64,000 nucleotides of DNA from NCBI GenBank assembly GCA_002269645.1, contig NIVC01002844.1, forward strand, positions 1 through 64,000. The letters run 5' to 3'. This DNA is from Macrostomum lignano (lineage: Eukaryota). The position numbers and the translations under genes are program-made. This document shows, one piece after another, positions 691-38,022 of the stretch. The notes under the pieces were generated by a model. It saw only the letters and a program-made list of their open reading frames with translations. It did no database searches and was not told where the DNA came from. Numbering within the stretch: the stretch's first letter is position 1; each line of letters opens with the position of its first letter.

Positions 691-1235
691 GCACAAGCAG
701 TCTGTCGCTGACTTTTAATAGCAAATTCGGCAATTTTTATTTTGTTTTTTCCTAAGCACAAATTTTAGCTATGCTATTAGACACAATACTGAAAACTAAT
801 TTCTTCAAATTATTCAGCACATCTAGTAGCCACTATTGATAGCACAACGTTTTAGTCGCAAAACTAGCTTACATATTTTATAAATGCTAAGGCTTTAAAT
901 AACTTTATTTTGTATTAATTCTGAGCCTTTTATGCAAAAGTCACATTAGAAACGCTTAAACCGCATGTTAATGGAAAGTACAGCTTAGCTACCAAAATTT
1001 TTCAATGCATAGCACTATTTGAAATTTTTTACTCTCGAAAGGTTATTAGAAATTTTATATCTCTACCGTACAAAAATCGCTAATGTTATCAATTAAGAAT
1101 ATTATCAACATTAGGAATTTTTAAGCGAATATTTCAAGACCACTGAATTATCCGATTTTACCTACGGTACCAGTTTCAATAGTCCATGACCAGAAGTGCT
1201 CAGAGTTGGTAGTCCCCAGAGTAGAGTAAAGCTTG

Positions 1236-7937: not shown

Positions 7938-8820
7938 CATTAGTGCCGCTGCCAAATGACATGTCGGAATACTTGTCCCTTCCTGGGTAGGCAGCAATCA
8001 AGAAGTGCCCGTCTAGACTATTGCTTGGCTCGCCGTCGGCCCACAAGCTGCTGTCCACGGTGTTGTTGCAGCCGACCCAGTGCCAGCCCAAGGACTACTA
8101 GACTAGAACTATAACATTCCAGTGGTCCTTGCGCCAGCCAGCTGACGCGCGCGTGGAAGCCTCCCAGCCACAATGAAGTTCCACCGTCTGCTATATCGGG
8201 TCAGCCATGCTCACCAGCAGGGGCGTCGCCATGGATTTTATGGTAGGTGGAACAAAGCCAAGAACTCAAAATGTACATGTACATGACTAAATTCCTCCTA
8301 AATTTCCATTATTTTAAGGATCGTGTTGTCAGCGCTCATTTTAGCACCGCAGGCACTCATTTTAGCGCCACAGGCACTCATTTTGGCACCGCAGGCACTC
8401 ATTTTGGCGCCGCAGACATTCCTTTTAGCTACACAGGCACTCATTTTAGCGCCACAGGCACTCATTTTGGCGCCGCAGGCACTCATTTTGGCGCCGCAGA
8501 CATTCCTTTTAGCTACACAGGCACTCGTTTGGCGCTGACGGCACTCATTTTGGCGCCAGAGGCACACATTTTGCCACAGGCAAAATTATTGATTACCACA
8601 ACTAGTCACAAGGTGGGGTGGGGGGACAAAGCATTGGCATGTCCCCCATAGCTTTTAATAGAAGGGACATGTCCCCCCTGTCCCCCTCGGGTGGCGACGC
8701 GCCTGATCACCAGACCGCTCTCCGACTCGCATGTCGACTTTACAGTGTCCCACGGGCCGCTGACCACCTTGTACTTGACTCCGCACAGGTCGTCTCCGTA
8801 TCCGGGAGGACACAGCAGTC
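7938..8820 (-). pseudogene. Disrupted PAN/C-type lectin copy (lectin-domain half only), most similar to copy E
   Basis: 7938-8110 closely matches 27657-27830 (e.g. acttgtcccttcctgggtaggcagcaatcaagaa). There is a ~50-bp insertion near 8090-8150 and a hAT element at 8218-8705. Lectin sequence resumes at 8706-8820 and is then truncated. Confidence 0.85.
8218..8705. mobile_element. hAT-type non-autonomous element (488 bp) with internal ~21-bp tandem repeats
   Basis: TIRs CAGGGGCGTCGCCA / TGGCGACGCGCCTG. 8-bp TSD ctcaccag (8210-8217) / atcaccag (8706-8713); intact paralogues have a single atcaccag here. An 8-bp TSD is characteristic of hAT. Confidence 0.85.
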
Positions 8821-9118
8821 TTGCCAGCATTGCTAAACAAAATTCAACATTTTGAAGAAAAAAAGCTGTCAAAAAACCCAACGCCTCGTGTAAGTCAGTC
8901 AATATTTTGTTTAGGAGTTTGCTTTGAGAGCATTTTTTCAGCGTCAAAAAGTACAAGAACCTTCCCGCAACTCGTATATTGTCTATCACCTCACTGACTA
9001 AAAAATCAGCAATACAGTGAAACTCCACGATGTCTTTTGCATTTGTACTTCTCGCACAGTTTTCAAGAAGCATCATCATCAGCATTATTGCTTGCAGTCG
9101 GTCGAATTCCTGTTCAGT

Positions 9119-9859
9119 TCAGCTGAATGGGGAGACGCACTCACACAGACCGCGACTGCCGCTGCCCACACTCATATCGGACAGTCCGTTTCTTCCCGTA
9201 TAGGCAGCGATCAAGAACTGATTCGAATCGTCGTTGCTGGGCTCGCCGCTGCCCCACAGGCTGGCGTCCACGGTGATGTTGCAGCCGACCCAGTACCAGC
9301 CGCCATCAGGCTCCGGGCTGCCGTCCGGCTGGAAGCCTCCCAGCCACAGATTGCTACCATCACGAAGCGACTCCACGTGGCTCATCTCTGAGCTGCTCGT
9401 CACGTCCGCCATGATCACCAGACCGCTCTCCGACTCGCATGTCGATTTTATGTCGTCCCACGAACCGTTGTACTCCTTGTACTTGACTCCACAGAAGTCG
9501 TCTCCGTATCCGGGCGGACACAGCAGTCCCGCCGGCAGTCCCGGCTGCTGCCTCACGAACACCCGGCCTCGTCTCGAGCAGCCGCAGTCCCTCACAGACT
9601 TGCTGCACTTGTTGAACTCGAACAGCTCGCACGGACCGTCGGACAGGCTGAAGGCCTGGCACTGCGGCCTGTCCCAGCACAGAATGGCGCACTGCAGCTC
9701 CGAATTAATGCCCAGGAATGTTTGAACAAAGTCGCTGCTGATGCACAGGGAGCCATTGATGGGAGTGAATCCCGGAGAGCAGGACTGGCTGCTCAGAGCA
9801 GAGCTCAGCAGTGAGGCAAAGATGAGCGCGATACAGATGTTTCCGGTAGAATGCTGCAT
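9119..9859 (-). CDS. Secreted PAN/Apple-like + C-type lectin protein, copy B (246 aa)
   Basis: Start placed at MQHSTGNICIALIFASLLSSALSS (ATG 9859) by alignment to paralogues. Same Cys pattern; EPSN motif. Confidence 0.85.
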   Translation of the reverse strand: MQHSTGNICIALIFASLLSSALSSQSCSPGFTPINGSLCISSDFVQTFLGINSELQCAILCWDRPQCQAFSLSDGPCELFEFNKCSKSVRDCGCSRRGRVFVRQQPGLPAGLLCPPGYGDDFCGVKYKEYNGSWDDIKSTCESESGLVIMADVTSSSEMSHVESLRDGSNLWLGGFQPDGSPEPDGGWYWVGCNITVDASLWGSGEPSNDDSNQFLIAAYTGRNGLSDMSVGSGSRGLCECVSPFS

Positions 9860-10565
9860 TCCAGTTGCCGTTTCGGATCTGGTAGTCATTTTCGCACTTA
9901 GACTTACCTGCTTTTTAAGCAGGGCGTTCATGTGATCCGTTTTTTGCCATTGGCTGCTGCCTATCTGCTGGCAGGGGAGGATTGTGAAAGTAGTGATAGG
10001 CAATGAGTTTTTTTGAGATCAGAAGTATTGCCAAGTTTTTCGTTTTTTTTCTTTCGTTTATCTGAATAAAATGTTTTTTTTACTTTAACGAACAATGACA
10101 GCTGTCTATCTCTTTTCTTCTTGAGGAAATTGATATTTGAGAACAGGTAAAGGGCCTTGCTGCATCATCCACCCATATGCCAGTTTGCTTTTAGTGCTTT
10201 TAGCGCTAATGCAGTGAGGAAATGACAATGTCTCGGTTTTACATAAAATATCTTGTAATCTTGTAACTTCGCTGAACTGCCATGACTTGCTGAGAAAACT
10301 GCTCTATAATTTCCTTAATTGTGCCAATCATTTCGTTCTCCGTTTAGTCGCATTTAAAAGGCTGATCCTCTACCTTCAGTAGCTTTACCGTCACATCATA
10401 GTAAGAACTTGCGTGGAACGCGAATCGGGTGAGACCGCGCAGCGACATTCCCAGCCTGGTTTCACGCTATAAAATGTATTCTGCTAGTAGTGCTGGATAA
10501 ACTTTACTCCAGCACAATGGCTTGTGTTTGGGTTCCAGGAAGCTTGGCTGCCTGTAATGAATAGG

Positions 10566-12088: not shown

Positions 12089-12829
12089 TCAGCTGAATGG
12101 GGAGACGCACTCACACAGACCGCGACTGCCGCTGCCCACACTCATATCGGACAGTCCGTTTCTTCCCGTATAGGCAGCGATCAAGAACTGATTCGAATCG
12201 TCGTTGCTGGGCTCGCCGCTGCCCCACAGGCTGGCGTCCACGGTGATGTTGCAGCCGACCCAGTACCAGCCACCATCAGGCTCCGGGCTGCCGTCCGGCT
12301 GGAAGCCTCCCAGCCACAAATTGTTACCACGACGAAGCGACTCCACGTGGCTCATCTCTGAGCTGCTCGTCACGTCTGCCATGATCACCAGACCGCTCTC
12401 CGACTCGCATGTCGATTTTATGTCGGTCCACGAGCCGCTGACCACCTTGTACTTGACTCCGCAGAAGTCGTCTCCGTATCCGGACGGACACAGCAGTCCC
12501 GCCGGCAGTCCCGGCTGCTGCCTCACGAACACCCAGCCTCGTCTCGAGCAGCCGCAGTCCCTCACAGACTTGCTGCACTTGTTGAACTCGAACAGCTGGC
12601 ACGGACCGTCGGACAGGCTGAAGGCCTGGCACTGCGACCTCAGGCCACACAGCATGGAGCAGTGCTCCACCGATGTAACTCCAGTGATGTTGCGGACGAA
12701 GTCGCTGTTGATGCACAGGGAGCCGTTGATGGGAGTGAAGCTCAGGGAGCAGGCCTGGCTGCTCAGAGCAGAGCTCAGCAGTGAGGCGAAGACGAAAGGA
12801 ACGAGAAGGTTTCTGCCAACTCACTGCAT
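12089..12829 (-). pseudogene. PAN/C-type lectin copy C, full-length but TGA at codon 3 (pseudogene, null allele or sequence error)
   Basis: ATG CAG TGA GTT GGC... at 12829-12821. The rest is an uninterrupted 244-codon paralogue (VGRNLLVPFVFASLLSSALSSQACSLSFTP...CECVSPFS). Confidence 0.75.
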
Positions 12830-16691: not shown

Positions 16692-17429
16692 TCAGCTGAA
16701 TGGGGAGACGCACTCACACAGACCGCGACTGCCGCTGCCCACACTCATATCGGACAGTCCGTCTCTTCCCGTATAGGCAGCGATCAAGAACTGCTTCGAA
16801 TCGTGGTTACTTGGCTCGCCACTGCCCCACAGGCTGGCGCCCACAGTGTTGTTGCAGCCGACCCAGTACCAGCCGCCATCAGGCTCCGGGCTGCCGTCCG
16901 GCTGGAAGCCTCCGAGCCACAAATTGTTACCACGACGAAGCGACTCCACGTGGCTCATCTCTGAGCTGCTCGTCACGTCCGCCATGATCACCAGACCGCT
17001 CTCCGACTCGCATGTCGATTTTATGTCGTCCCACGAGCCGCTGACCTCCTTGTACTTGACTCCGCACAGCTCGTCTCCGTATCCGGACGGACACAGCAGT
17101 CCCGCCGGCAGTCCCGGCTGCTGCCTCACGAACACCCAGCCTCGTCTCGAGCAGCCGCAGTCCCTCACAGACTTGCTGCACTTGTTGAACTCGAACAGCT
17201 GGCACGGACCGTCGGACAGGCTGAAGGCCTGGCACTGCGGCCTGTCCCAGCACAGAATGGCGCACTGCAGCTCCGAATTAATGCCCAGGTATGTTTGAAC
17301 AAAGTCGCTGTTGATGCACAGGGAGCCGTTGATGGGAGTGAATCTCGGAGAGCAGGACTGGCTACTTAGAGCAGAGCTCAGCAGTGAGGCAAAGACGAAG
17401 GCAGTTTTGAGGCACTCAAGATGATGCAT
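16692..17429 (-). CDS. Secreted PAN/Apple-like + C-type lectin protein, copy D (245 aa)
   Basis: Intact ORF with signal peptide MHHLECLKTAFVFASLLSSALSS; same architecture; EPSN motif. Confidence 0.87.
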   Translation of the reverse strand: MHHLECLKTAFVFASLLSSALSSQSCSPRFTPINGSLCINSDFVQTYLGINSELQCAILCWDRPQCQAFSLSDGPCQLFEFNKCSKSVRDCGCSRRGWVFVRQQPGLPAGLLCPSGYGDELCGVKYKEVSGSWDDIKSTCESESGLVIMADVTSSSEMSHVESLRRGNNLWLGGFQPDGSPEPDGGWYWVGCNNTVGASLWGSGEPSNHDSKQFLIAAYTGRDGLSDMSVGSGSRGLCECVSPFS

Positions 17430-18689: not shown

Positions 18690-20005
18690 CTTCAAGGCCA
18701 TGTCGCGAATGAACGCCACGCCGCCGGCCGAATCCGAGGCAAAGGCGTCAGCCAGCAGGCAGTCGAAGAAACGCCGTGCGGGCCTGCCCCCGCCGGTAGG
18801 GTGCCTGCAGCGTTAGCAGCAGCACCTCCTGCACCGGCTCTGGGCAGTACGACCAGGCGCGGATGATTTCGCCTGTCAGCTGGAGTCGCCGACGGCGCAA
18901 CAAGTCGCTTGGACGGACCAGGCCGACGCGGCGATACAAAGCCGCGTTGGTCACTCGCTCGTAGCCGATCTTGAAGGCAGCGCAGCAGGCCAGCTTGTGC
19001 CGCGTCAACTTTCTGCTCGAGCGACTCCGTCAGCGTCCCGGTCTTGGCGTTGTACAGCAGGGCGGTCTCGATCACCGTCCAGAACAACGCCACCCTCTGG
19101 CGCTTAGGTAAGGCCTTGGACTGCAGGACTGCCCTCACAGAACAAAAGGCAGCCCAGGCAAGCCTGCGGCGACGCCGCAAATCCTCGCGGACGCCAGGAA
19201 TTAGACCGCCGAGGTAGACGAACTGCTGACAACTCGGAAGCTCTGTCGCCTGTCCTAAAAATCGCAGCCTCGATGTCATCCGGTACGCAGAGCATGACGG
19301 TCTTATGCGAGTTGACCACCAGGCCGACACTCTCCGCGACAGTAACTAAGCTTGTTAAATTGTCGCTGGGCTCCCTCGACAGTTCAGGACAGCAGGGCGA
19401 GATCGTCGGCGTAGCCAAGCACGCTGAGCTACCTTTCCGGTTGACGTTGACCCACGCGTCGCCGCAACAGAAAGCCGTCGTCGTTGGTAAGTCCGCAGCA
19501 CCCATTCAAGAACCAGAACGAAGCGAAAGCTTATCTCCTTGAAGCACCTCGGAGGATGTCTCAAAGAAGTCCGATAGGCCGTCCGGTGTTGAGACAGCAG
19601 CTTTCGTATCACAGTACTCGCCTGATGGCGGAAATCAGCTGCTCTGGCAGGTTGTACGCACGGAGCACCTTTGGGAGCACAGACCTGACGACCGAGTCGA
19701 ATGCCTTCTTGAAATCTATGAAGATAACAATCAGGATCGACTGGCATATCCGTGCTTCCTCGATGACTCGCCGAAGAGTCAGGATCTGCGTCACCGTGGC
19801 GCGATAGGGCCAGAAGCCGTTCTGCTCAGGACGCAGGTACGGATCCAGCATGGGCTACAACCGCAATAACAGCAAGACTGAAGGCAGATACCTCGATGCT
19901 CGTCAAGCCTCGTGGTGCCCGGCTTCTTAGGAACTGCGACGATGTGCGCCGTGATCCATTTGTTGGGTGCCTCCTCACCGAAGAGCACGCGAGACAGAGA
20001 TTCTT
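18690..20005 (-). mobile_element. Decayed, 5'-truncated non-LTR retrotransposon (RTE-like RT)
   Basis: Frameshifted RT motifs: IVAVPKKPG, EQNGF, IFIDFKKAFDSV, VLQGD, GYADD. C-terminal ALLYNAKT...VTNAALYRR...RRRRLQLTGEIIR is typical of RTE-clade ORFs. Confidence 0.85.
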
Positions 20006-20685
20006 CTGTTTTCGCTGTGGCTTGGACTCTCAGAGATATTTCAGGAGTCAAATAAAGGATAAGTTGGTTGCTGTTTAAATTTACAGTCATTTGACTTTTG
20101 GTTTATAATATCTTAGCTCTCCTGAATTAGGCAAAAACAGCGCTTTTAAGGTTTTGTGACCAGTTGAAGTCTTACTATTCCATTCGTCAAAATTAATGGA
20201 TCTTGTCGGATAGAAAAAAATGAGAACTAATGAGAGTTTTATAATTAGCTCATTTTTTTAATCAAGCTTCTCAAGCTGGGAGAAAGTAAAGCCACGACTG
20301 AGACGAAGATAATAGGATCCAAGCTGATCAAGAGAAGGAATGGGACTGAGAGGAATACCTAACCTCGTATTAATGCCAAAAGTGAATTCCACTTTTCATT
20401 TGGAAAAGCAGAGGACACTTAAAGCAGTCCGACAGTCTGGCTGCTTTTAGCTTTTTAGGCAACTAAAGAGCAAGCTTCTTTAGAAAATAGTTCTGAATAA
20501 TGGAAAAAATTAAAGGGTTTAAAACAAGGTACCATCAAAGCAGGGTGTGACGATATTAGATGTACATTATTTCACAACTGGCAAGTGCATTACTCAAAGT
20601 GTATTTAAACTCACTTCGAACAGACAGCTTCATCTTTACAGCTCAGCTGCTTTTAAATAGTAATGTCCATTGCAAAGGAAAGATA

Positions 20686-23600
20686 ATGAACTTTGACGAG
20701 TCTGACAACCTCAAGAAACAACGCGAGATCCGGGAAACGGCTGAAATGATGAAAAAAATCGTAAGTTTTTTGTTTGTTGGTTTGAAATTCATCTATCTCC
20801 TGTATGTTAGATCAGCAGTCGTGAAACTTTCATTGTTGTTTCACATATCCAATAAGCAAATTAATGTTTTAATGAGTTTTAAAACTCTAAACTTGCCCAG
20901 GGTGCTCAAAGACGTTTTCGCAGTTTTGATCGACTCAGCGCAAAACTCAGGTTGTTTCTTGATTCTGTGGATCTGATCAGAAGTGAAGAAGGCGAGCAGC
21001 TGAAGTCCGAGCTGTTCGAGGTCGTGGTTGTCGGCGACCAGTCGGACGGAAAATCCACCCTTCTTGAGGCCATCACTGGTGTCCAGCTGCCAAAAGGAAC
21101 AGGAATTTGCACCCGCTGCCCAATTCGCTTGATTATTCGAGAAGCTGAGACTGAGTCTGCCTCGATTCAGTAAGTCTTGGCTGTCTGATCGCTTTGGGAA
21201 CTGTGATCTCGAAAACCTTATCTCAAAACCAATAGAAAAATTTGAAAGTGAAATTCCTTTTAAGTTTAAGCTCTCCAATCGTAATAGATATGTTCAAAAA
21301 AATGAATTAGCTATTAGATGCTTAGCAAACCACGGGTCCAACTTGTGTAGTATTTTTGTGACGCTGCTTTATATATTATTTTGCTTTCCTACTTTAAAGG
21401 ATCAACGAACAACCATCTAGAGAGGTTTCGGACCTCTCTAAACTCGAATCGGAACTTCAAAGGGCTCAGGATGACGTAGTCGCCGGAAGAAAGACCTCGA
21501 CAAAACCGATCACCGTTAAAGTAAATGGCCCACTGCTTCCTAATATTTCTGTTGTTGATCTTCCGGGAATAAACAGGTGAGATTTGAGCAAAAGTCTGTG
21601 GAACCTTTGCCAGTTTAATTAAGTTCGTGATATTCTGAAAAGTTGATTTTGTGTAAGGCCAACTTGGAGCTAGATCTGGTTTGTAGACATTGCCACAATT
21701 ATCACAATTTCGCTTTTAGAGAAACAGGTGACCGTGAGCAAGAGACAGTCGAGCTCATTAAGAAATGGATCACCCCACAGGAAACAATTGTTATTGTCAT
21801 AGCGAAGGCAACTAACGATATCGCTGCTTCAAAGGGCTACCAGTTGGCGCAGGAGGTGGACCCCGATAATAAAAGGACGTTTTTGGTGATTACGAACTGT
21901 GATGGATCCCTCGAGAATAAAGAGACTGATATTCAAAAGCTATTTAGTGAGAAGAAAAAGAAATTGTTCGCTGTCAAGTGCTTTCGCAGCACGGCCGATA
22001 CTACTGCTACTAGCCGAGAGGAACTCATGAATCACGAGGCGCAGTTCTTTGCCCAACATAAATTGTTCAAGCACTATTCACAAAATACCGGAACAGCACA
22101 GCTTATCCAGTCTCTGGAGGCTTTGTTGTGCAAAAAAATCGAACCACATCAGCAGAAAATTTTGCGCCACGCACGGGTGAGTACAATGATTTTGTATTTA
22201 CAATGATTTGGAACTTTATGCATACTTTTGAAATGTTGCATACACTCTTGCACTAATTGTACACAAATTATTTGCCAGAGAAGAGTGCGAGAACTTGAAA
22301 AGGAGTTGGAAGACCTCAAAACTGGGGAAAGCAAGTTCATGGACTGCGTTGATGAGTGCGTCTTTGATATTCGCACAGAGATCAGAGACCAAGTGACCGG
22401 CTCAGATGAGTCTGAATACCGAGACAACAAGCTCTATCAGAAATGCCGTGATGAATGGATGAACGCAGGCACCATGATGCGGGAAGAGTCGGCTAATTTC
22501 AAGAAAGACTGTAAGTTATGATGAAAAGTTTTTTCATTTTTTCTTTAGTTCGACTCTGACTCATTATTTTAGGAGTGGGAAGAGGAAAGGATGAGGCCTA
22601 GTTTATCTCCTAAGAATTCTAGGACTTCCTGAAGCAAGCCATGTGGCATCCAACATCGGCAGTGTTCTACCGTCCTCAGGCCACTATTTCCGAAAGAGTA
22701 TCGGAAATAGTAGTCAAGGAGAACTTGAAGAGCCCTCAGAAAGGCTACTCATTCTTGGAAGCTGTAGGGTTGTAATCGACACTGCATGCAGCGCCGGCAG
22801 CGACAGACGACCTAACAGATACGTCGCCGACAACCACTGAAACCGGGATGTCCAGTAGTTCAGATGTTCTAGCTGTCAACGCTTGATCAGAAAAATCAGA
22901 TGTATTCAAAACATGGTATCCATAGTAATTTAGGTGCCTTCTGTTGAAGAAGCCGACGGCGTCCGGTTGATGACTAAATGCTTGAGAGACTAGTTGAGAT
23001 GTCAAGCAGTTAAGATTTTTCGATTTCGAGGCTCCAGTGACATCAGAGAAATTTGCAAAAGGATGTCCATAGCCACCTGTTGCCATCTTTTGAGTGACGT
23101 GATTGCTCATTGGACTAGTTAAGGATGACCAGCAGTTGAGGTTTGCTCACTATTGAGGCTTGATCAGCGAAGTAGAATCAAGTCCTAGAATCAAGTGCTG
23201 ATGAAATTAGAAGGCTTCGAAGGGCCACTCTGAGGCGCAGTGCTGATTGGCGCACAGGCGTTGTACTGAATAGCATTAGTGTTTATGTAAACGCTAAAAC
23301 CGTTCTGACGGGATCATTGAATCTCTCGACGGTCCAGAGTCCTAGTGACTTGATTTTTGTTTGAGGTGCGCAAAAAACTTGCAGGCAACTTCGTGTGGCT
23401 GCGTTGCTCCGTTGCGCAGCAAAAACACCCCTTGGTATAAGAAGGATAGAAAAAGGCTACTGTTTCCTTGTAGAGCCTTGTTTTTTACTTTAATGTACAA
23501 GTGCATCTACGAGTATACGTGTGTGCGTTAATTTGTGTATTCGTGTACTTTTTTGTTAGCAGAAGTCTCCCGCAGATAACTCGTATTCAAACGAAGTTTT

Positions 23601-25695
23601 CTTCCCTTGCGTACCACAACTTCTATGCCTGCTATAAGTATGAGCAAGTTTCAGCCTTCTACCATCTACATGTACTTACGTTGTAGTCCACTACAAGTAC
23701 GAGTATTACACACGCTTCAGTGTTATTTCGCTTGTACCCGTAATCGATGTTAAAACCTCGTAGTCCTCATCGTCGTGCATCCTCCATTGTAACGATACAA
23801 TATGGTACAATCTTGGTACAATATGGGTTGTCAGATTCAGTGCATTCGTGTTTTTTATTCTTGCAGTACTGTCGACCATCAGAAAAGAGTGCGAAGCTCA
23901 AAGAGGCCGACAACTGGAACAGTTGCCAAACAACAGCCCGGTCTTGGAGCGAATCATCGGCAGATTGATTGAATCATTCAAGACTCTTGTCGGAGACACT
24001 ACTCAGGCCACGCAGAGTTATGTGCATGAAGAGCTCGTCAAAATAGTCAGGAATAACCTGCAGAAGAAACCTCTGCTGAGGGGTCTGCAACAGCTGGAAG
24101 AAATTCTAACTGATGGTTGTAAAAATCAAATGGATAAGCTTAAGGAAAAAGCGCACCGGAAAGTGCTGGAAATTCTAGACATGCAGAAAGTCATCTTCCT
24201 CAACAACCCAAAGATAGATGATCTGTTCAGGTATGTGTTTACATTAAATTTTTACACTTCTTTCATCCTTAATATCTTTATTTGAGTTCATTAATCATTT
24301 TCAGGGCGAGCTGCCTATTTTGATTAATATTTCATAAATTGGGTTCAAATAGCAAAGTTGAAAATTTAAGCGAAGGTTTCACTGTATAATGTACGAGCGT
24401 CGATTAGGTTTATGCTTTCTAGGTACGCTCGTATACGGATTCAAGTGTTTTTATTCTTGAGTCAGACTGGTGCCGAGCAAATCAAATTGTGTTTGTGAAA
24501 CTGGATGGGAAGTTATAATGTAATCCTACATGTATGCTTAGACATAATGAAATTTAAGCTTTGAAAAAAATCCGTTCAAACCACTGGGACCAATACGCCT
24601 CCGTATCCTGCTATATAAACCTAATTAGCACCTGTTTAAACCCAAAAGAAGACACAAGAGCAGCAGCATTAGCACGAAAGGGGATGCGCGGAAGCAACCC
24701 CATAAAAGCAGCAGCTCAAATTAAAAGTTTGTTTGGCATCACGAATGCAAACAGCGATGCAAGAAAATTGGAAAAATACGCGTCGTAAAACTTGAAAGAA
24801 AAACATTTTTTGAGCTCACGCAGGCAGCGAAAAAACGCAGAGTCAACTGAGCGAGACGCCAATAAAAGGGGCGACGGCGCAGAGGCTAAAGCCCATGCCA
24901 CCAGGCCACTACCCCACGCACGCAGAGCCAAGAACACCCCCCCCCCCACATAGCAAAGCGAGAGAGAACGTACGCAAAGCGACACGCAAGACAGGGCAGA
25001 AGAGAGGGATTTGAAACTGGTTATTGTCATTGACTAGTCAAGACCAGTCACAAACCAACATATTGTATTTCAACAATTTATCTATTTAATTAGCTGGTAT
25101 TTTGTTCCGCAATCACTACCAACTTGAATTTTCCAGCAAAATGGCTCACGAGAAAGACGAGCAAGCTGCTGAACATGCTCCTGAAAAAAAAGCAAAATCT
25201 TTGCTGCAAATCATTGAAGACTGCGCCAAAGACTGGCTTGAAACAAGTGATTCAGCTGGTTCAGGCGCAGTTCAGGCTGCTCTGGTTGGGATCATGTCGA
25301 AATTAGGGCTCCACCCGCCGATATCGCAACTGCTTGTCATCGCCGCGTTGAATTTCTTGCCTTGGTGGTTCTCACAGCCGGAATCAAAGGATCAAAGCTT
25401 CGACCACAAGGACGATGAGCACCGGCTGGTGTGCCTCACCTACGTGTACATAGAATTGGTCTGCGATCGAACGGCCGACGCGGTGCCGATGGCCATCATT
25501 CACTTCTTTAATAAAAGGCTGGCGGCGGACGTCTGCAAGCTCATTCCGCATCCTAAGTGGGAAGATTTAAAGAACCTTAGCACCTGTGCCCAGCAACAGC
25601 AGAAGATAGAATCTGCTTCTGACAGCCTGAGGCGTTGGAAGGACATTGTCGCACAGTTGTGCAGCCCAACATCTGATGAGACGTCAGCAGTTTAA
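20686..25695 (+). CDS. Mx-like dynamin-superfamily GTPase, 7 exons, ~710 aa
   Basis: Exons 20686-20760, 20901-21169, 21400-21576, 21720-22176, 22279-22510, 23867-24230, 25137-25695. All introns are GT-AG with consistent phases (2133 nt total). Motifs: G1 VVVVGDQSDGKS, LPKGTGICTRCP, G3 DLPG, G4-position TNCD, stalk QRGRQL (cf. Mx YRGREL), GED-like YIELVCDRTADAVPMAIIHFF. Confidence 0.88.
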
Positions 25696-26072
25696 ATCGT
25701 GGTATTTCGTCGGTATTGATTTCTATATTAGTTTGTGGCGCTAGGGTGTTAATGTTAAAGACAATTTTTTTTCAAATAGTTTAAACATCCTATTAAAATT
25801 TCATTCATGTCATTAAAACTTTGAACGTTTTGTGAAGTTTTTACCAGCAAAGCATCGCAAAGTTCACTGAGGCTATCATTATAGTTTCGTCAATGGTATT
25901 CACTTAGCTATATTGAAACGAAGCAATGATATCCTCGATCGGGTATCAGTTAACTTTAGTTCTAATTTTAGGACTAAATCACCCTTCAAACTTCATACGA
26001 TCGGAGACTTAAAGTGTCTTCAGGCTTCGATGATATGAAATTTCAATGGTTTTCGAGTACTATGCTTTAGAT

Positions 26073-26240
26073 CGGGGTCCCCAAACCACTGGCGGCAGAG
26101 GCTGTAGCAGAGTACGTCCTTTGCAGGCTTGAATGCCATCATATATCAGTAGTTACCAAGACAAAAATGACTCCAAAATTAGAAACAGAAGCTGCGGGCC
26201 GCGCAGAAATGGCCTTTAGGCCGCAGGTTGGGGATCCCTG
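26073..26240. mobile_element. hAT (Charlie-like) MITE, 168 bp
   Basis: Ends cggggtccccaaacc / ggttggggatccctg. Perfect 8-bp TSD ctttagat at 26065-26072 and 26241-26248. Confidence 0.85.
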
Positions 26241-26251
26241 CTTTAGATAAT

Positions 26252-26367
26252 GGGGTCGTACTATAAAGCTGTCGTAGCGTAAGTTCGATCGTACGTCGGA
26301 ACTTTTACACTGCGGAGATAGGAGCTAAGAACGATCTTATCTTACGATGGCTTTATAGAACGGGCTC
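26252..26367. mobile_element. Small inverted-repeat element (possible PIF/Harbinger-type MITE)
   Basis: ggggtcgtactataaagctgtcgta ... tacgatggctttatagaacgggctc form ~25-bp imperfect inverted repeats. TSD not clear. Confidence 0.45.
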
Positions 26368-27625
26368 AAAAAGTTTCAGGCTTGGGGTCTTGGGAAAAAG
26401 AGCCCAGAAACCAACCGCGTTTAAGAACGCTCATTATTTATGAAAAAATTGCGTCTGCTTTACAATTTTTAAAACAAAGAGTACGTTCATGCGATTTTAC
26501 TGTATAATTTTACAACCATCTACTGCAGACATACAGACATTAATAATAATATATTAATATCAGACATACAATTATGCAAACTTATACACGCTTTTTCAGA
26601 AGCTAGTAACTTGTTGTTTAATCTTATACAGCCATCTCTATTCAGGTGAGCTCGAACTTGATGCGGGCTTTGTATATTTATCTTATTTATAATCTTTAGT
26701 TTGCTTGTATTTGGTTGAATTATGCCTTCTGCCGCGGTGCACTTGCGTTCACCCGACGCTGCACCTACCCTCACGTCTGCGTCAAGCCCCTTTCCTCTGA
26801 ACTTTTAATTAAAGCGATTTATTTCTGATGTGTAGGCAGTGTTTCAACCAGCCGACTCAACTTTTTTTATTTCTTGTATCGTTTCTTGTAGGCTTTCTCT
26901 GTGTTAATTTTTTGGTAGAAAGTATAGGATATTTAGGTGAAACCCTTTTGAATAATAAATGATATTCATAATCCTAATTATATTCCGTGATCCTTTGAAT
27001 AAGAAATATATACTGTGCGATAAATTAGTTTTTTATATTTTATAAGCTCGTAAAACAATATATTTTGTTCGCTGCAATTTATCTTTATCATAAACCCATC
27101 GCATGGACATATGACTAACTACCGGTACTTATCTACACTTTATATTACATGTAAGACTATGTTGATCCTTCATTCTTAATCCTGATTTGACACATGTACG
27201 TCGTATCAAACTATCAGTGTCCTGATAGTCTCCTGAAAGACTACATGAAACTCAGAAAAAGAAAGTTTTCATTCTTCTTTGCACGCATCTTTGTTAAAAT
27301 CAGTTCGAAAAATGGCAGTTCAATCGGTTTAGCTCTTCGACAAAATTAAAACTGAAAATCCTTTATATTTAGGCGCCCATGGCTAATTAGATACGGCTTA
27401 GCAGTAGGATTCCTGTAGTAACTGCTTCAGTAAGCGCTTTAACTGTGGCCCTTGGTCACAAGATGCGTTTAAGATTAAGATATATCACAACCACAGATCA
27501 ACAGAGCGCCGCTTATGCAGAAATTAGTTGGAAAACGCCATTGTCTTTCTAACGTGGTCGGAAAAGTTTGCAAAGCTTCATCCAGACTTATGCAACAGTA
27601 GAGTCCAAGCTTTTCGTCTCTGCAT

Positions 27626-28372
27626 TCAGTTGAACGGCGACTGGCACTCGCAAAGTCCATGAGTGCCGCTGCCCAGAGACATGTCGGACAACTTGTCCCT
27701 TCCTGGGTAGGCAGCAATCAAGAACTGCCCGTCAAGACCATTATTTGGCTCGCCCTCGGCCCACAGGCTGCTGTCCACAGTGTTGTTGCAGCCGACCCAG
27801 TGCCAGCCGCCTGCCGGCTCCGCGCTGCCGGGAACCTGGAAGCCTCCCAGCCACAATGAAGTTCCATCCGTTCGAAGCGACCGCACCGAGTTTACGTGCG
27901 CCATCTCTGCTATGCTTGTCACGTCCGCCATGATCACCAGACCGCTCTCCGACTCGCATGTCGATTTTATGACGTCCCACGAGCCGCTGACCACCTTGTA
28001 CTTGACTCCACACAGGTCGTCTCCGTATCCGGGCGGACACAGCAGTCCCGCCGGCAGTCCCGGCTGCTGCCTCACGAACACCCGGCCTCGTCTCGAGCAG
28101 CCGCAGTCCCTCACAGACTTGCTGCACTTGTTGAACTCGAACAGCTGGCACGGACCGTCGGACAGGCTGAAGGCCTGGCACTGCGGCCTCAGGCCACACA
28201 GGATGGCGCAGTGCTGCTCCGAAGTCACGCTTGGGAATTTTCGCACAAAGTCGCTGTTGATGCAGAGGGAGCCGTCAGTAGGAGAGAATCGAGTTTTGCA
28301 GAGCTCACTGCTGACTGACAAAGTTGCACAGGCAGAGACGATGCTCAACGTAAGGCTGTAGGCGACCTGCAT
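27626..28372 (-). CDS. Secreted PAN/Apple-like + C-type lectin protein, copy E (248 aa)
   Basis: Intact ORF with a divergent signal peptide, the shared core and an EPNN motif. Confidence 0.87.
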   Translation of the reverse strand: MQVAYSLTLSIVSACATLSVSSELCKTRFSPTDGSLCINSDFVRKFPSVTSEQHCAILCGLRPQCQAFSLSDGPCQLFEFNKCSKSVRDCGCSRRGRVFVRQQPGLPAGLLCPPGYGDDLCGVKYKVVSGSWDVIKSTCESESGLVIMADVTSIAEMAHVNSVRSLRTDGTSLWLGGFQVPGSAEPAGGWHWVGCNNTVDSSLWAEGEPNNGLDGQFLIAAYPGRDKLSDMSLGSGTHGLCECQSPFN

Positions 28373-33894: not shown

Positions 33895-34626
33895 TCAGTG
33901 AAACGGCGACAGGCACTCGCAGAGACCGTATTTGGCGAACGAATAGTCAGTGAGTCCGCTCTTTTTGGTATAGACAGCGAGCAAGTTCTGCCCATCACCG
34001 CCATCGTTTGGCTCACCACCGGCCCAAAGGCTCGGGTCCAAAGGGATGTTGCAGCCGACCCAGTACCAGCCGCCATCAGGCTCCGCGCTGCCGGCCGTCT
34101 GGAAGCCTCCCAGCCACAGATCGTTACTAGGACGAAGCGACTCCACGTGGCTCATCTCTGAGCTGCTCGTCACATCCGCCATGATCACCAGACCGCTCTC
34201 CGACTCGCATGTCGATTTTATGACGCCCCACGAGCCGCTGACCACCTTGTACTTGACTCCACAGAAGTCGTCTCCGTATCCGGGCGGACACAGCAGTCCC
34301 GCCGGCAGTCCCGGTTGCTGCCTCACGAACACCCGGCCTCGTCTCGAGCAGCCGCAGTCCCTCACAGACTTGCTGCACTTGTTGAACTCGAACAGCTGGC
34401 ACGGACCGTCGGACAGGCTGAAGGCCTGGCACTGCGGCCTCAGGCCACACAGGAAGGAGCAGTGCTCCACCGATGTAACTCCAATGACATTGTGGACGAA
34501 TTCGCTATTGATACACAGGGAGCCGTTGATGGGAGTGAATCTCAGGGAGCAGGTCTGGCTGCTCAGAGCAGAGCTCAGCAGTGAGGCAAAGACGAAGGCA
34601 GTCTTGAGGCACTCAAGATGATGCAT
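33895..34626 (-). CDS. Secreted PAN/Apple-like + C-type lectin protein, copy F (243 aa)
   Basis: Start placed at MHHLECLK (ATG 34626), the same leader as copy D. EPND motif; distinct C-terminal loop sequence. Confidence 0.87.
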   Translation of the reverse strand: MHHLECLKTAFVFASLLSSALSSQTCSLRFTPINGSLCINSEFVHNVIGVTSVEHCSFLCGLRPQCQAFSLSDGPCQLFEFNKCSKSVRDCGCSRRGRVFVRQQPGLPAGLLCPPGYGDDFCGVKYKVVSGSWGVIKSTCESESGLVIMADVTSSSEMSHVESLRPSNDLWLGGFQTAGSAEPDGGWYWVGCNIPLDPSLWAGGEPNDGGDGQNLLAVYTKKSGLTDYSFAKYGLCECLSPFH

Positions 34627-36078
34627 GGCTGCAGCAGGAGCTGCTTTCGCTGCAGCTTGATTGAGCTGATGTACTTTATATACATTGAGCTTTCTGGTGA
34701 GGGATGCCATTGGCTTGCAGGGCCAGAGTATTTTTAGAAGTGGCAGTACTGTATTGCAGAAATATTCTCTAGAACAATATTGTCCGTCAAATACGAGTAG
34801 TTTTAACATTTCGAGCTTCACAAACCTTTCTCAAAGTTTTTTATCAAAAGGTCGGTTCACGACGGAGCTGTGAATTTTGTGAGCAATTTTCACGCTGTAA
34901 AAATTATGTTTTAGAGGTTTAAAAAGCTTTAAAAATTAATATTTTCGGATTAGTGATCCATTTTAATCGTTAAAACCTTTGAAAATTTGAATATGATTAT
35001 GAAGAACTTAATGAGTAACTGAGACTCAGGCTAAGAGTTGCCATGCCAACTGAAAATTTCGGCTTTTTTTAAAAGATCGGGAGTTAAGAAATTTAGTCAA
35101 AAATAGCAGGTTACGAGCAGAAAGAAGCATCATTCATCTCATTGTTTGATTTGCAAGCGACTTGCTTGCCGAGTTTTTACCCCCAGCTCAGCAGCTGACT
35201 GGCTCCAGAAGAGACTTCCTTCCCCTGCAGCAGCCTTTGCCCACGCGTTAAAAAACTTCAACAATGCAGCACATGCGGCAGCAAAAACTGAAGCGGCTGC
35301 TATTGCAGGCATATTGATATTTTTAGCGTTTCTCCAATCAAAAGTGCGGCTAAGGCTTCTTACTACAGAGGTACTATGACGAAATTTTGCTTGATTCGCC
35401 ATTCAATCCAGCTATTTGTGGGAGAGCGTGCAGTACCAGCTTCCATAATGCTTGTATCATTTTCTCATGAGCTTCCATCATCTAATTTCATGGCTCTGCA
35501 TGGCTCGTACAGTCTTAAACAAGCACAAGATTCGATAGAAAATGAGCCGCTGTATGCACCAGGGAATATATTAGTTTTTGCAAAGTTATTGCAAAAAAGA
35601 ATAGAACCAATATCAGTAGCGGCTACTCCAAGCTCAAAGTTACTGGCGTTGGCTCTGGCTATAAAATTACTTAAAGAAAAGAGAATCACGTCTGCTCATA
35701 ATTTTTTTAAAATTATGATCGAGATTGAGACTGAGATCGATTTCATATTCTGCACGGAAATGTTTGCATTCTAATTTCTATATTAGTCATTGTCAGTGCA
35801 GTGATGAATTACAGAATTTTAATTCATTTGATTTTTCTGGTAGAAACTGCAAGCAGAAATCATGAACAAATTTCTTACTCAGCGTTACTCAGCGTTGAAT
35901 CAGTGAGTGGGAACGACTCCAGAGTAGCTCTAGCCTCTAGGCGGCAAGTTTCACGGTACGTGCCAAAACCTACTGACGAAAATGCTTGCCAATCATGGAA
36001 ACGTAGCTTTGCAGCAGAGTTGCACGAAAAGTTTACTTAAAAACTCACTGAGCGAGCATTTTCAACTCGAGCGCGGTG

Positions 36079-36319: not shown

Positions 36320-37231
36320 ATGAAGTTCCTAGTGCTCTTCGCCTGCTTGAGCGTCGCGAACGCCTACGACAGGCTCATCATCGACGGTGTGGAGGCCAGC
36401 ACTGGCCAGCACCCGGACCTTGTCAGCCTTCAGCGCAACGGCAACCACTTCTGTGGCGGCACCCTGTACGACAAGAGGACCGTTGTCACCGCTGCTCACT
36501 GCTTCTATGGCAACAGCGGCACCTTCGGACTGGCTGTTGTGGCCGGCGAGAATGACCTGACTCTGTCCAACAGCGCCAACAGGCGCTCCTACCGCGTCAG
36601 CCGCGTCATCATCCACCCGGACTACCGCAGCTCCTACCACTACGTCCAGGGCGATGACATCGCCATCCTGAAGCTGAGCTCCGATGCCGACCTCGGTACG
36701 GCCACCATCAAGGCCGGTGATTTCGAGGACGCTGTAAGCCAACCTCGGATGCGCTTATTTTTCCTTCTGTACTTTAGCATTGCGCAAAACAATAACAATA
36801 ACAACAATAACAAAATAATGAGGAAGCTAGCAGTGTCTGATGAAACTCACAAACACCTCCTCTAGGGTGTGGACATCCCGCCGGCGGGAAGCAGCTGCAA
36901 GGTGGCCGGCTGGGGCGCTATCGACCCGTCCGGCAGGTACGCCCACACCCGCAAGATGATCGGCGGTGTGTCCTCCATCACCAACAATGACTGCGCCCGC
37001 GTCTTCAACCGCGTGCTGGGCAACACCAAGCAGGTGTGCGCTGGCGGCGGCACCACCACCAACGCCTGCCGTGGCGACTCCGGCGGCCCGCTGTACTGCA
37101 CCTACAATGGCAAGACCAGGCAGGTCGGTATCGTGTCCTATGGACGCGTGCCCTGCGGCCAGGTCGGAATCCCCACCGTGTACACCCGCGTGGCCACCTA
37201 CAGGCGCTTCATCGACCAGTACTCTGGCTAA
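36320..37231 (+). CDS. Secreted S1A (chymotrypsin-fold) serine protease, 2 exons (36320-36733, 36866-37231), 259 aa
   Basis: Signal peptide, mature N-terminus IIDG, catalytic motifs TAAHC / DDIAILKL / GDSGGP, and a phase-0 GT-AG intron. Confidence 0.95.
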
Positions 37232-37273: not shown

Positions 37274-38022
37274 AATTTGACGAGGTGCTTTTCAACATTG
37301 AAAAACATGGGAAACAACGAAGCGATGATTCTACATATTTATTGTTTTTGCTCTGTTTTAATTTAACTTCTAAGCTCATCAAATGCGAACTGGCAACAGG
37401 CGAGAATTCACACCAAGGCAACGAGTAAAATTGGTGCTAGTGAAAAATAAGAAAAACTATATGAGTGCTTAAAGTTTTTAGCATACTGACTTAAGAATAA
37501 CGAAATGAGACAATTAGTTTCTTCTTTTAGAAATTTTCTCACTGCTACGTCTGGCGCATTGAAGCAGAGAGAGGAGAGAGAATCAATAACAACTCACTGT
37601 CCAGACAGTCTCCAATGGACGGCATTGGTTAGTCCCGGCAGAAATTTGATGCCGAAAAGACAGGGTCGGAGGTGCTTCTGACAGGGCGTGAGCGCGGCCA
37701 CCCAGTACCCACCCTCCCGCAAAATGGATTTGCTTTTTTTGCTATTCAGCCTTACTAAGACATTCCAGCGATGAGTTTAATTCATTTCAGCCAGAAATTC
37801 ATTGGGGTGGCGCAGGAGCCGAGTACAGAATCCACAGTTGTGCACTGGGGCGGGGGGTTGCACCGTGCCGAGTATTTTTGAGAGAAAAGCAAGGGCGTTT
37901 GTTTACCCAAACTGCCCGCTCGCGAATTTCGGCTTTTTTCTCTCTCACTATACGCCTATAAGCTAACAAGCTTGACATTGCACAGAGGAAAGGCAGCAAG
38001 TAGAGCAGCGGAGTCTACCATC

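What the first reader, a model, noticed from the sequence alone, without database searches (positions are those of the whole stretch)
20686..25695. Intact Mx-like GTPase in an invertebrate, nested inside the lectin array
Seen: a complete 7-exon ORF with consistent splice phases. Established: GDQSxGKS, LPxGxGIxTRCP and RGR[E/Q]L, with no PH or proline-rich domain, are closer to Mx antiviral GTPases than to classical dynamin (GGQSAGKS) or Drp1. Inference: a fast-evolving Mx-like restriction factor in a lineage without a known interferon system.
Basis: partly seen in the sequence, partly recalled or inferred. Interest (0 to 1): 0.7.

Follow-up and report, generated by a model that had tools for sequence, protein, structure and literature searches.

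The report
Divergent flatworm Mx-like GTPase gene
This is an intact gene of the flatworm Macrostomum lignano, already annotated from transcript data, that encodes a large GTPase of the Mx (antiviral dynamin-like) branch; Mx genes were already published for this species, so it is mainly one more, unusually divergent, family member.

Summary
Seven GT-AG exons (20686-25695, + strand) give a 710-aa ORF that is 100% identical to UniRef A0A1I8JFR4 and NCBI PAA54901.1 of Macrostomum lignano. That annotation was built from RNA-seq.

The protein has a dynamin G domain, a stalk and a GED-like C-terminus, and no PH domain or proline-rich tail. It scores far better against Mx than against other dynamin-family clades:
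- PDB phmmer: MxA 145 bits, dynamin 99-105, Drp1 81.
- Clade HMMs: Mx 178 bits, Dyn 101, Drp1 96, Opa1 84.

Trees exclude Dyn/Drp1 (bootstrap 100; RELL below 0.01). They favour, without significance, a position inside spiralian Mx (RELL about 0.85).

Invertebrate Mx is not new. Langley et al. 2025 (PNAS) reported "at least six" M. lignano Mx proteins. This gene belongs to a second, more divergent M. lignano group that is absent from their supplementary files.

All M. lignano Mx-like proteins lack the G4 lysine (TNCD here). This gene also carries a hydrophobic helix-Pro-Pro-helix in the L4-loop position.

The flanking C-type-lectin-like array is real. Antiviral function, inducibility and fast evolution remain untested.

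The parts
20686..25695 (+). Complete coding region of the Mx-like GTPase gene (7 exons, 710 aa; = PAA54901.1 / A0A1I8JFR4)
20686..20760 (+). Exon 1 (ATG; aa 1-25)
   Evidence: donor GTAAGT
20901..21169 (+). Exon 2 (N-terminal BSE helix, G1 GDQSDGKS at 21033-21056, switch I LPKGTGICTRCP at 21087-21122)
21400..21576 (+). Exon 3 (177 nt; G3 DLPG at 21557-21568). The paralogue gene for P0055 has an exon of the same size and phase
21720..22176 (+). Exon 4 (rest of the G domain; G4 TNCD at 21892-21903, which lacks the usual lysine; VKCFRS at 21973-21990)
22279..22510 (+). Exon 5 (BSE helix 2 and first stalk helix)
23867..24230 (+). Exon 6 (stalk; Mx-type RGRQL motif at 23902-23916)
25137..25695 (+). 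Exon 7 (enlarged L4-equivalent loop, GED-like helix at 25405-25527, last BSE helix at 25579-25662, stop TAA)
25258..25374 (+). Hydrophobic helix-Pro-Pro-helix (aa 566-604, GSGAVQAALVGIMSKLGLHPPISQLLVIAALNFLPWWFS) in the position of Mx loop L4, the dynamin PH domain and the Drp1 B-insert
   Evidence: low pLDDT, two short helices; maximum Kyte-Doolittle 1.69 over 15 aa, 1.46 over 19 aa; alignment
16692..17429 (-). Nearest upstream member of the flanking PAN-like + C-type-lectin-like gene array (context, not part of the gene)
27626..28372 (-). Nearest downstream member of the same lectin-like array (context)

Best explanation
Shown:
- The locus is an intact gene of Macrostomum lignano whose public model was built from RNA-seq.
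- It encodes a 710-aa dynamin-superfamily GTPase of the Mx branch.
- It belongs to a divergent subgroup that is, among named records, specific to M. lignano: this gene, its 96% paralogue P0002, and P0055, P0208 and P0057. A relative (P0056) occurs in one unidentified transcriptome.
- The predicted architecture is an N-terminal BSE helix, a G domain, a helical stalk, an enlarged L4-equivalent loop, a GED-like helix and a last BSE helix.

Inferred mechanism:
- Like other Mx and dynamin proteins, it binds GTP through intact G1-G3 motifs and the G4 aspartate.
- It dimerises through the G domains and self-assembles through the stalk into rings or filaments.
- It uses the L4-equivalent loop at the stalk tip to engage its target.
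- Here that loop carries a hydrophobic helix-Pro-Pro-helix, so this paralogue most likely acts on a membrane surface rather than free in the cytosol.

By homology, by the expansion of the gene family, and by its position among lectin-like genes, the most likely role is innate defence against viruses or other intracellular parasites. It would be regulated by something other than interferon.
For: Gene and transcript:
- The splice model is identical to the NCBI and UniProt models.
- The NCBI annotation of this assembly is a filtered, genome-guided RNA-seq transcriptome (PMC5730564).

Mx rather than other dynamin-superfamily clades:
- PDB phmmer: MxA 144.8 bits and MxB 142.7, against dynamin 99-105, Vps1 90, Drp1 81 and OPA1 70. 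The Mx alignment runs on into the stalk, to residue 443.
- Exhaustive HMMER: after the M. lignano paralogues, the named top hits checked are mostly vertebrate Mx1/Mx2-like and chiton 'Mx3-like' proteins, with a hemichordate, an oomycete and a green alga among them.
- Clade HMMs: Mx 178 bits, the six published M. lignano Mx 148, Dyn 101, Drp1 96, Opa1 84.
- Shared signatures with Mx: GDQS, TRCP, VKC and RGRxL, where Dyn and Drp1 have G(G/S/T)QS, TRRP and V(V/M)N in the G motifs. For the RGRxL site only the match to MxA was seen.
- NJ: Dyn+Drp1 form a clade that excludes this protein, bootstrap 100.
- ML on the G domain: RELL 0.54 + 0.31 for Mx-affiliated topologies, 0.005 for Dyn/Drp1.
- ML on the full length: nested among spiralian Mx, RELL 0.50 + 0.35, against 0.14 for outside.

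Architecture:
- AF2 mean pLDDT is 79.7, with a G domain and long helices.
- Foldseek matches MxB, dynamin and Drp1 over the full length.

A real family:
- Five introns have the same phases as in the P0055 gene, and one exon is 177 nt in both.
- A divergent-type and a canonical-type transcript both occur in run SRR30276804.

Gene turnover of Mx as a sign of antiviral use is argued in PMC11789081.
Against: - No functional, expression-level or induction data exist for this gene.
- The placement inside Mx is favoured but not significant: dlnL 4.6-5.7 with SE 5.5-9.4 on the G domain, and 10.3 +/- 10.6 on the full length.
- The plain NJ G-domain tree leaves the group unresolved at the base (27%).
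- The G4 lysine is replaced (TNCD), so GTP affinity may be altered.
- Pfam finds no GED in this protein.
- The hydrophobic segment is modelled at low confidence (pLDDT below 50). Its 19-residue Kyte-Doolittle maximum of 1.46 is below what I take as the usual transmembrane cut-off (about 1.6, from my own knowledge).
- The fold search does not separate Mx from dynamin or Drp1.
Confidence: 0.6

Rival explanations
1. It is a lineage-specific membrane-remodelling dynamin-like protein with a cellular housekeeping or tissue-specific role, such as shaping an organelle or secretory granule, and has no part in immunity. The hydrophobic hairpin would anchor it to that membrane.
For: - Most dynamin-superfamily proteins remodel membranes, and whether all Mx-like lineages are antiviral is open (PMC11789081).
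- The L4-equivalent loop carries a hydrophobic helix-Pro-Pro-helix that is fully conserved between the two 96% paralogues.
Against: - It groups with Mx rather than with the membrane-remodelling clades.
- The family is expanded and divergent within one species, which fits turnover better than a fixed cellular job.
- The hairpin is absent from the other members of the divergent group.
Confidence: 0.25
2. It is a GTPase-impaired duplicate on its way to decay, or a non-catalytic partner or regulator of other Mx proteins, because the G4 lysine is lost.
For: - G4 reads TNCD instead of TKxD.
- The lysine is present in 200 of 235 aligned dynamin-superfamily proteins.
Against: - The ORF is intact over seven exons, and the public gene model was built from RNA-seq.
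- G1, the switch I threonine, G3 and the G4 aspartate are all kept.
- The lysine is missing from every M. lignano Mx-like protein, including the six published ones (TCPD/TFPD). It is therefore an old, tolerated lineage trait rather than recent decay.
- The 96% paralogue is also listed as an uninterrupted protein.
Confidence: 0.12
3. It is the flatworm orthologue of classical dynamin, Drp1/Vps1 or OPA1, misread as Mx-like.
For: - The Pfam domains are shared by all these families.
- The fold search gives dynamin and Drp1 E-values equal to those of MxB.
Against: - M. lignano has its own Dyn (PAA64382 and others) and Drp1 (PAA85687), which cluster with their orthologues at bootstrap 100 and exclude this protein.
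- Clade HMM scores are 77-94 bits lower than for Mx.
- ML RELL is 0.005.
- Pfam finds no PH domain, and I see no proline-rich tail or N-terminal presequence in the sequence.
Confidence: 0.01

Closest known systems
Vertebrate MxA/Mx1 and MxB/Mx2 (interferon-induced antiviral GTPases)
   Same: - Best sequence matches among solved structures.
- Same G-BSE-stalk-GED layout with no PH domain or proline-rich tail.
- Shared GDQSxGKS, (V/C)TRCP, VKC and RGRxL signatures.
- A variable loop in the L4 position.
   Different: - Only about 30% identity.
- G4 is TNCD, not TKPD.
- The L4-equivalent is about 95 residues instead of about 40 (my estimate) and contains a hydrophobic helix-Pro-Pro-helix.
- The host has no interferon system (Mx predates interferon).
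- Antiviral activity is untested.
The six Macrostomum lignano Mx proteins of Langley et al. 2025 (PAA92268, PAA69582, PAA74204, PAA76532, PAA83069, PAA94353)
   Same: - Same species and same Mx branch.
- Same loss of the G4 lysine (TCPD/TFPD there, TNCD/THCD here).
- ML slightly prefers them, or the chiton Mx, as sister group.
   Different: - No closer in sequence than vertebrate Mx (120-133 bits against 147).
- They form a separate clade.
- This gene and its group are absent from that paper's supplementary files.
Other invertebrate Mx (abalone Haliotis, chiton 'Mx3-like', Owenia, Saccoglossus)
   Same: Spiralian and deuterostome Mx clade. In full-length trees the divergent group nests next to the chiton and M. 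lignano Mx proteins (bootstrap 76).
   Different: - Those keep TK(P/M)D or TRPD in G4 and carry shorter loops.
- Abalone Mx is reported to be inducible by poly(I:C) (my own knowledge, not checked here). Nothing comparable is known for this gene.
Wider Mx-like lineages (bdelloid rotifer / Bradysia 'Mx-like', plant and algal DRP4-type, oomycete proteins)
   Same: Comparable bit scores in the two sequence searches (127-161 bits). They share the P-loop, and all but the alga (TRVP) share TRCP.
   Different: Their position relative to animal Mx was not resolved in my tree. They keep the G4 lysine.
Classical dynamin and Drp1
   Same: Same superfamily fold and probably the same assembly principle.
   Different: - No PH domain, proline-rich tail or Drp1-type B-insert.
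- Different signature residues.
- Excluded by the trees.

Membership tests
Dynamin superfamily (large GTPases) | Dynamin-type G domain with G1 (GxxxxGKS), the switch I threonine, G3 (DxxG) and G4 ((N/T)KxD) | tested here: met
   Pfam Dynamin_N scores 6.3e-39. GDQSDGKS, T96 and DLPG are present. G4 keeps the threonine and aspartate but has Asn in place of Lys (TNCD).
Dynamin superfamily (large GTPases) | Middle/stalk region and a C-terminal GED that folds back as a bundle-signalling element | tested here: met
   Pfam Dynamin_M scores 2.1e-19. AF2 gives long stalk helices and C-terminal helices at 615-655 and 673-700. The GED consensus (Y..I...R..D.VP.AI..F) aligns with Mx, Dyn and Drp1. Foldseek gives full-length matches at E 1e-23 to 1e-20. 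Pfam GED itself does not hit this protein, only paralogue P0055, and weakly.
Mx clade | Phylogenetic placement with Mx proteins, apart from Dyn, Drp1, Opa1 and Mfn | tested here: inconclusive
   Excluded from Dyn+Drp1 (bootstrap 100; RELL 0.005). Mx-affiliated topologies have RELL 0.85 on the G domain, and nested-in-Mx topologies 0.86 on the full length. The likelihood differences are within about 1 SE, and the NJ G-domain position is unresolved. Clade HMM scores favour Mx by 77 bits or more. Mfn was not included.
Mx clade | Mx-type signature residues (GDQSxGKS, VTRCP, VKCR, YRGRELPGF) | tested here: met
   GDQSDGKS, CTRCP, VKCFR and QRGRQLEQL are present. Dyn and Drp1 differ at the three G-motif sites shown. 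GDQS is also shared with Opa1.
Mx clade | No PH domain, no proline-rich domain, no Fzo domain, no transmembrane domain and no mitochondrial presequence | tested here: met
   No such Pfam hits. By my reading the N-terminus is a charged helix. The only hydrophobic stretch (566-604) has a 19-residue Kyte-Doolittle maximum of 1.46, below what I take as the usual transmembrane cut-off of about 1.6.
Mx clade | Antiviral activity and induction by infection or innate signalling | not testable with these tools
   No expression or challenge data were found. The gene name is absent from the searchable literature.
Classical dynamin | PH domain between the stalk helices and a C-terminal proline-rich domain | tested here: not met
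   No PH hit. The protein ends 10 residues after the last BSE helix.
Drp1/Vps1 | Orthology to Drp1 (G(S/T)QSSGKS, VTRRP, B-insert) | tested here: not met
   M. lignano Drp1 is PAA85687, which sits in a clade that excludes this protein. The Drp1 HMM gives 96 bits against 178 for Mx.
C-type lectin-like domain proteins (the flanking array, context only) | CTLD sequence profile | tested here: inconclusive
   Pfam Lectin_C hits four of six copies below threshold (15.5-19.8 bits; cut-off 22.6). A profile of the six hits L-selectin (7e-5) and otherwise almost only C-type lectins in the PDB; the one exception is a weak PAN-type hit. WLGGF, GGWYWVGC and GEPN-type motifs are present.

The most novel reading that the evidence does not exclude
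This gene would represent a second, previously unlisted lineage of flatworm Mx proteins that has been rebuilt for work on membranes. The target-recognition loop L4 is replaced by a membrane-inserting hydrophobic hairpin. The guanine-contacting G4 lysine is lost, as in all M. lignano Mx-like proteins, which implies altered nucleotide handling. The gene also sits inside a secreted-lectin array, as part of an interferon-independent innate-defence locus.
Probability: 0.2. Interest if true: 0.55.

Novelty: new member of a known kind. Interest (0 to 1): 0.3.

Why it matters
- It adds to published evidence that Mx-type GTPases predate interferon.
- It shows that the M. lignano repertoire is larger and more diverse than the 'at least six' reported. 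At least four more clusters at 50% identity form a separate divergent group.
- M. lignano can be made transgenic (PMC5730564) and is said to be amenable to RNAi (my own knowledge). Its Mx-like genes could therefore be used to test what Mx proteins do in an animal without interferon.
- The same genes could show whether the G4 lysine is dispensable and whether a hydrophobic L4 replacement redirects an Mx protein to membranes.
- As a discovery in itself it is incremental.

Tried and rejected
- My first splice coordinates were off by one base at four of the six donors (exons 2, 4, 5 and 6). I corrected them by requiring GT donors.
- A regex scan for classical CTLD motifs (WIGL, WxWxDG, WND) missed the lectin array, because the copies read WLGGF and GGWYWVGC. 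Reading the ORF translations found it.
- The word-indexed protein search missed both the vertebrate Mx proteins and the M. lignano paralogues. The exhaustive HMMER search was needed.
- The NJ G-domain tree alone could not place the group, probably because of long-branch attraction to the Opa1 outgroup. I therefore wrote an ML evaluator (Gonnet-derived rate matrix + 4 gamma categories) to compare fixed topologies.
- The first ML run timed out after finishing only the first of three topologies.
- The fold search does not discriminate between Mx, dynamin and Drp1.
- No DNA could be fetched for paralogue P0002, so no dN/dS could be computed.
- Neither the gene name nor the SRA run is mentioned in any searchable paper.
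- I considered horizontal transfer or a retrocopy origin and rejected both. The gene has six introns, and five have the same phases as those of a 31%-identical paralogue gene.
Full report
**What is there**

Reading 20000-26500 on the + strand gives seven exons with canonical AG/GT borders: 20686-20760, 20901-21169, 21400-21576, 21720-22176, 22279-22510, 23867-24230 and 25137-25695. They join into a 2133-nt ORF of 710 aa with no internal stop.

The translation is identical over its whole length to UniRef A0A1I8JFR4, 'Dynamin-type G domain-containing protein' of Macrostomum lignano. It also matches NCBI PAA54901.1 (BOX15_Mlig031156g1), which merely carries 15 extra residues read from the 5' UTR and is flagged partial. 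The window is contig NIVC01002844.1 of assembly GCA_002269645.1, with the same coordinates.

The GenBank annotation of that assembly is a filtered, genome-guided RNA-seq transcriptome (Wudarski et al. 2017, PMC5730564). A transcript-based model therefore has exactly the junctions I derived from sequence alone. An in-frame ATG at 20560 lies upstream of the annotated transcript start, so the start codon is the only soft point.

**Family**

Pfam gives Dynamin_N (6e-39, aa 66-233) and Dynamin_M (2e-19, aa 258-519). It finds no PH domain and no GED.

AlphaFold2, run with a 60-sequence alignment, gives mean pLDDT 79.7. The model has a G domain, long stalk helices, a low-confidence stretch at 553-613, and then helices 615-655 and 673-700. 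In the alignment these last two helices carry the GED consensus shared by Mx, dynamin and Drp1.

Foldseek against the PDB matches MxB, dynamin, Drp1, OPA1 and Mgm1 over the full length. MxB is nominally first (4whj_A, 2.6e-23), but dynamin and Drp1 are within one order of magnitude. The fold confirms the superfamily and says nothing about the clade.

**Mx or not**

*Sequence scores*
- phmmer against all PDB chains gives MxA 144.8 bits and MxB 142.7. Dictyostelium dynamin A scores 105.5, dynamin-1 99, Vps1 90, Drp1 81 and OPA1 70. The Mx alignments continue into the stalk, to residue 443, and cover the RGRQL / RGREL motif.
- An exhaustive HMMER search of 1.84 billion representatives finds, after the 96% paralogue, four clusters: P0055, P0056, P0057 and P0058. 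Three are M. lignano proteins and one comes from an unidentified Logan transcriptome. The next six hits checked are panda Mx1, turtle Mx2-like, chiton 'Mx3-like', a hemichordate protein, a green alga and an oomycete.
- I built clade HMMs from G-domain sequences taken from Langley et al. Dataset S02, from the PDB alignments and from named proteins returned by the searches. The window protein scores 178 bits against canonical non-flatworm Mx. It scores 148 against the six published M. lignano Mx proteins, 131 against the rotifer/Bradysia group, 101 against Dyn, 96 against Drp1 and 84 against Opa1. Every member of the divergent group shows the same ranking.

*Signature residues*

These agree with Mx: GDQS, TRCP and VKC, where Dyn and Drp1 have G(G/S/T)QS, TRRP and V(V/M)N.

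*Trees*
- NJ on 266 G-domain columns, 300 bootstraps:
  - Dyn+Drp1 is a clade that excludes this protein, support 100.
  - Canonical animal Mx, including the six M. lignano proteins, has support 90.
  - The window protein, P0002, P0055, P0208, P0057 and P0056 form a clade, support 83.
  - The position of that clade is unresolved (27). It sits at the base next to the long Opa1 branch, which is the classic long-branch pattern.
- To go further I derived a rate matrix from the Gonnet matrix and evaluated fixed topologies by ML with four gamma categories. On the G domain:

| Topology | lnL | RELL |
|---|---|---|
| Sister to the six M. lignano Mx, inside Mx | -11707.6 | 0.54 |
| Sister to all canonical Mx | -11708.7 | 0.31 |
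| Basal | -11713.3 | 0.14 |
| With Dyn+Drp1 | -11715.5 | 0.005 |

- On 603 full-length columns with Dyn/Drp1-like proteins as outgroup:
  - The group nests among spiralian Mx (lnL -25299.3 and -25300.5; RELL 0.50 + 0.35).
  - The alternative, outside canonical Mx, has lnL -25309.6 and RELL 0.14 (dlnL 10.3 +/- 10.6).
  - NJ bootstrap is 100 for Dyn/Drp1 against the rest. It is 76 for the divergent group + chiton + M. lignano Mx, and 22 for 'outside'.

Membership of the Mx clade is the best-supported reading but is not statistically decisive.

**What is already known**

Langley et al. 2025 (PNAS, PMC11789081) showed that Mx predates interferon. [quoted passage not shown] Their six are PAA92268, PAA69582, PAA74204, PAA76532, PAA83069 and PAA94353.

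PAA54901 appears in none of their 16 supplementary files. The same holds for the relatives PAA51889, PAA93057, PAA93058 and PAA51860. So the kind is known and published for this very species. This gene is an unlisted, more divergent member. It is about as far from the six (120-133 bits) as from vertebrate Mx (147 bits).

**The divergent group is a real family**

- The gene for P0055 (31% identical) shows the same phases for five of the six introns (2,2,0,1,2). It also has an exon of exactly 177 nt in the same place. This argues against retrocopies or foreign DNA.
- P0055 lies on two contigs, as expected for this duplicated genome.
- A divergent-type transcript (P0056) and a canonical-type transcript (P0084, 74% identical to the PAA92268 G domain) both come from run SRR30276804. 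That organism is unidentified. If it is a different species, as the 74% identity suggests, the two groups coexist outside M. lignano.

**Unusual features**

1. *G4 lysine.* G4 reads TNCD. The lysine of (N/T)KxD is present in 200 of 235 aligned dynamin-superfamily proteins. It is missing from every M. lignano Mx-like protein: TNCD, THCD or SHCD in the divergent group, and TCPD or TFPD in the published six. G1, the switch I threonine, G3 and the G4 aspartate are kept. I read this as an old, tolerated lineage trait, possibly with altered nucleotide affinity, rather than decay. Langley et al. do not comment on it.

2. *L4-equivalent loop.* The loop between the third stalk helix and the GED helix is about 95 residues long. 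This is the position of loop L4 in Mx, of the PH domain in dynamin and of the B-insert in Drp1. It contains GSGAVQAALVGIMSKLGLHPPISQLLVIAALNFLPWWFS.
   - This is the most hydrophobic stretch of the protein (Kyte-Doolittle 1.69 over 15 residues and 1.46 over 19). It is modelled as two short helices at low confidence.
   - It is identical in the 96% paralogue and absent from the other group members.
   - It is too short and too mild for a standard transmembrane helix. A leaflet-inserting hairpin is a reasonable but untested reading.

3. *Paralogue differences.* Of the 26 substitutions between this protein and its 96% paralogue, 19 lie in the G domain (aa 61-300) and none in residues 1-60 or 553-613. 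With only two sequences and no DNA for the second, this says nothing firm about selection.

**Surroundings**

Six paralogous ORFs and one fragment lie on the minus strand:
- 4272-5030
- 8606-9085 (fragment)
- 9119-10003
- 12089-12670
- 16692-17429
- 27626-28372
- 33895-34821

The proteins they encode are 71-91% identical to the first copy. Most begin with a hydrophobic, signal-peptide-like N-terminus (my reading of the translations). This is followed by a cysteine-rich PAN-like module and a C-terminal domain with WLGGF, GGWYWVGC and GEPN-type motifs.

Pfam Lectin_C hits four of the six at 15.5-19.8 bits, below its cut-off of 22.6. A profile of the six hits L-selectin (7e-5) and otherwise almost only C-type lectins in the PDB; the one exception is a weak PAN-type hit. 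The Mx-like gene lies in the 10-kb gap between two copies, on the opposite strand. Whether this proximity has any functional meaning is unknown.

**Mechanism and confidence**

*Shown:* the gene structure, a transcript-derived public model, superfamily membership, exclusion from Dyn/Drp1, and the best fit to Mx.

*Inferred:*
- GTP-dependent G-domain dimerisation and stalk-mediated assembly, as in MxA and dynamin.
- Target or membrane engagement through the L4-equivalent hairpin.
- A role in interferon-independent innate defence.

Rivals are a non-immune membrane-remodelling role (0.25), a GTPase-impaired or regulatory duplicate (0.12), and a misread dynamin or Drp1 orthologue (0.01).

**Verdict**

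The Mx-like call is supported. The 'fast-evolving restriction factor' reading is untested, and the novelty is largely pre-empted by Langley et al. 2025. This is a new, divergent member of a known kind. Interest is modest.

Noticed in passing
window 4272-5030, 8606-9085, 9119-10003, 12089-12670, 16692-17429, 27626-28372, 33895-34821 (all minus strand): Tandem array of paralogous single-ORF genes (71-91% identical to the first copy). Most encode a hydrophobic, signal-peptide-like N-terminus (my reading), a PAN-like module and a divergent C-type-lectin-like domain with GEPN/GEPS motifs. 8606-9085 is a fragment. No other gene is listed within 10 kb of the Mx-like gene in the gene table returned for this contig.
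   Followed up: partly
all M. lignano Mx-like proteins; window 21892-21903 for this gene: The G4 lysine of (N/T)KxD is replaced in every M. lignano Mx-like protein: TNCD, THCD or SHCD in the divergent group, and TCPD or TFPD in the six published ones. It is present in 200 of 235 aligned dynamin-superfamily proteins. Langley et al. 2025 do not mention it.
   Followed up: partly
L002 and L005 (Logan run SRR30276804); L006 (SRR30276812): One unidentified transcriptome contains both a divergent-type Mx-like transcript (P0056, 635 aa) and a canonical-type one (P0084, 74% identical to the PAA92268 G domain). The two groups therefore also co-occur in this unidentified sample, probably a related flatworm. 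The organism could not be determined.
   Followed up: partly
window 36320-36865 (+): ORF beginning with a hydrophobic, signal-peptide-like stretch (my reading) followed by the N-terminal half of a trypsin-like serine protease (Pfam Trypsin, 1.1e-22). This is probably the first exon of a protease gene next to the lectin array.
   Followed up: no
window 43981-45307 (+) and 18692-19330 (-): 43981-44457 has a Pfam RVT_1 hit (1.2e-9) and probably belongs to a retroelement. The adjacent ORF 44243-45307 and the ORF at 18692-19330 have no Pfam family and are only guessed to be retroelement-related.
   Followed up: no
window 55114-56745 (+): Large exon encoding the C-terminal part of a Bicaudal-D homologue (Pfam BicD, 3.6e-61).
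   Followed up: no
window 172-690 (+) and 1196-1924 (+): ORFs made of short tandem peptide repeats: an acidic 'TPANQEDDESADK' repeat, and 'SPQSQESRVR'-type repeats readable in two frames. Their nature is unknown.
   Followed up: no
window 23129-23423 (intron 5) versus 5788-6203 (minus): About 300 bp of intron 5 is 75-88% identical to a segment between two lectin copies. It is probably an interspersed repeat.
   Followed up: no
window 37972-39162 (+): 396-aa ORF with a weak hit to the 'Trematode PH-like domain' (PF25356, E 3e-4, below threshold). It may be a flatworm-specific gene.
   Followed up: no
P0002 (UniRef A0A1I8JAZ3) versus this gene, aa 476-552: The 96% paralogue's model lacks 77 residues that span the end of exon 6 and the start of exon 7. 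This is probably a prediction difference in the older assembly rather than biology.
   Followed up: no
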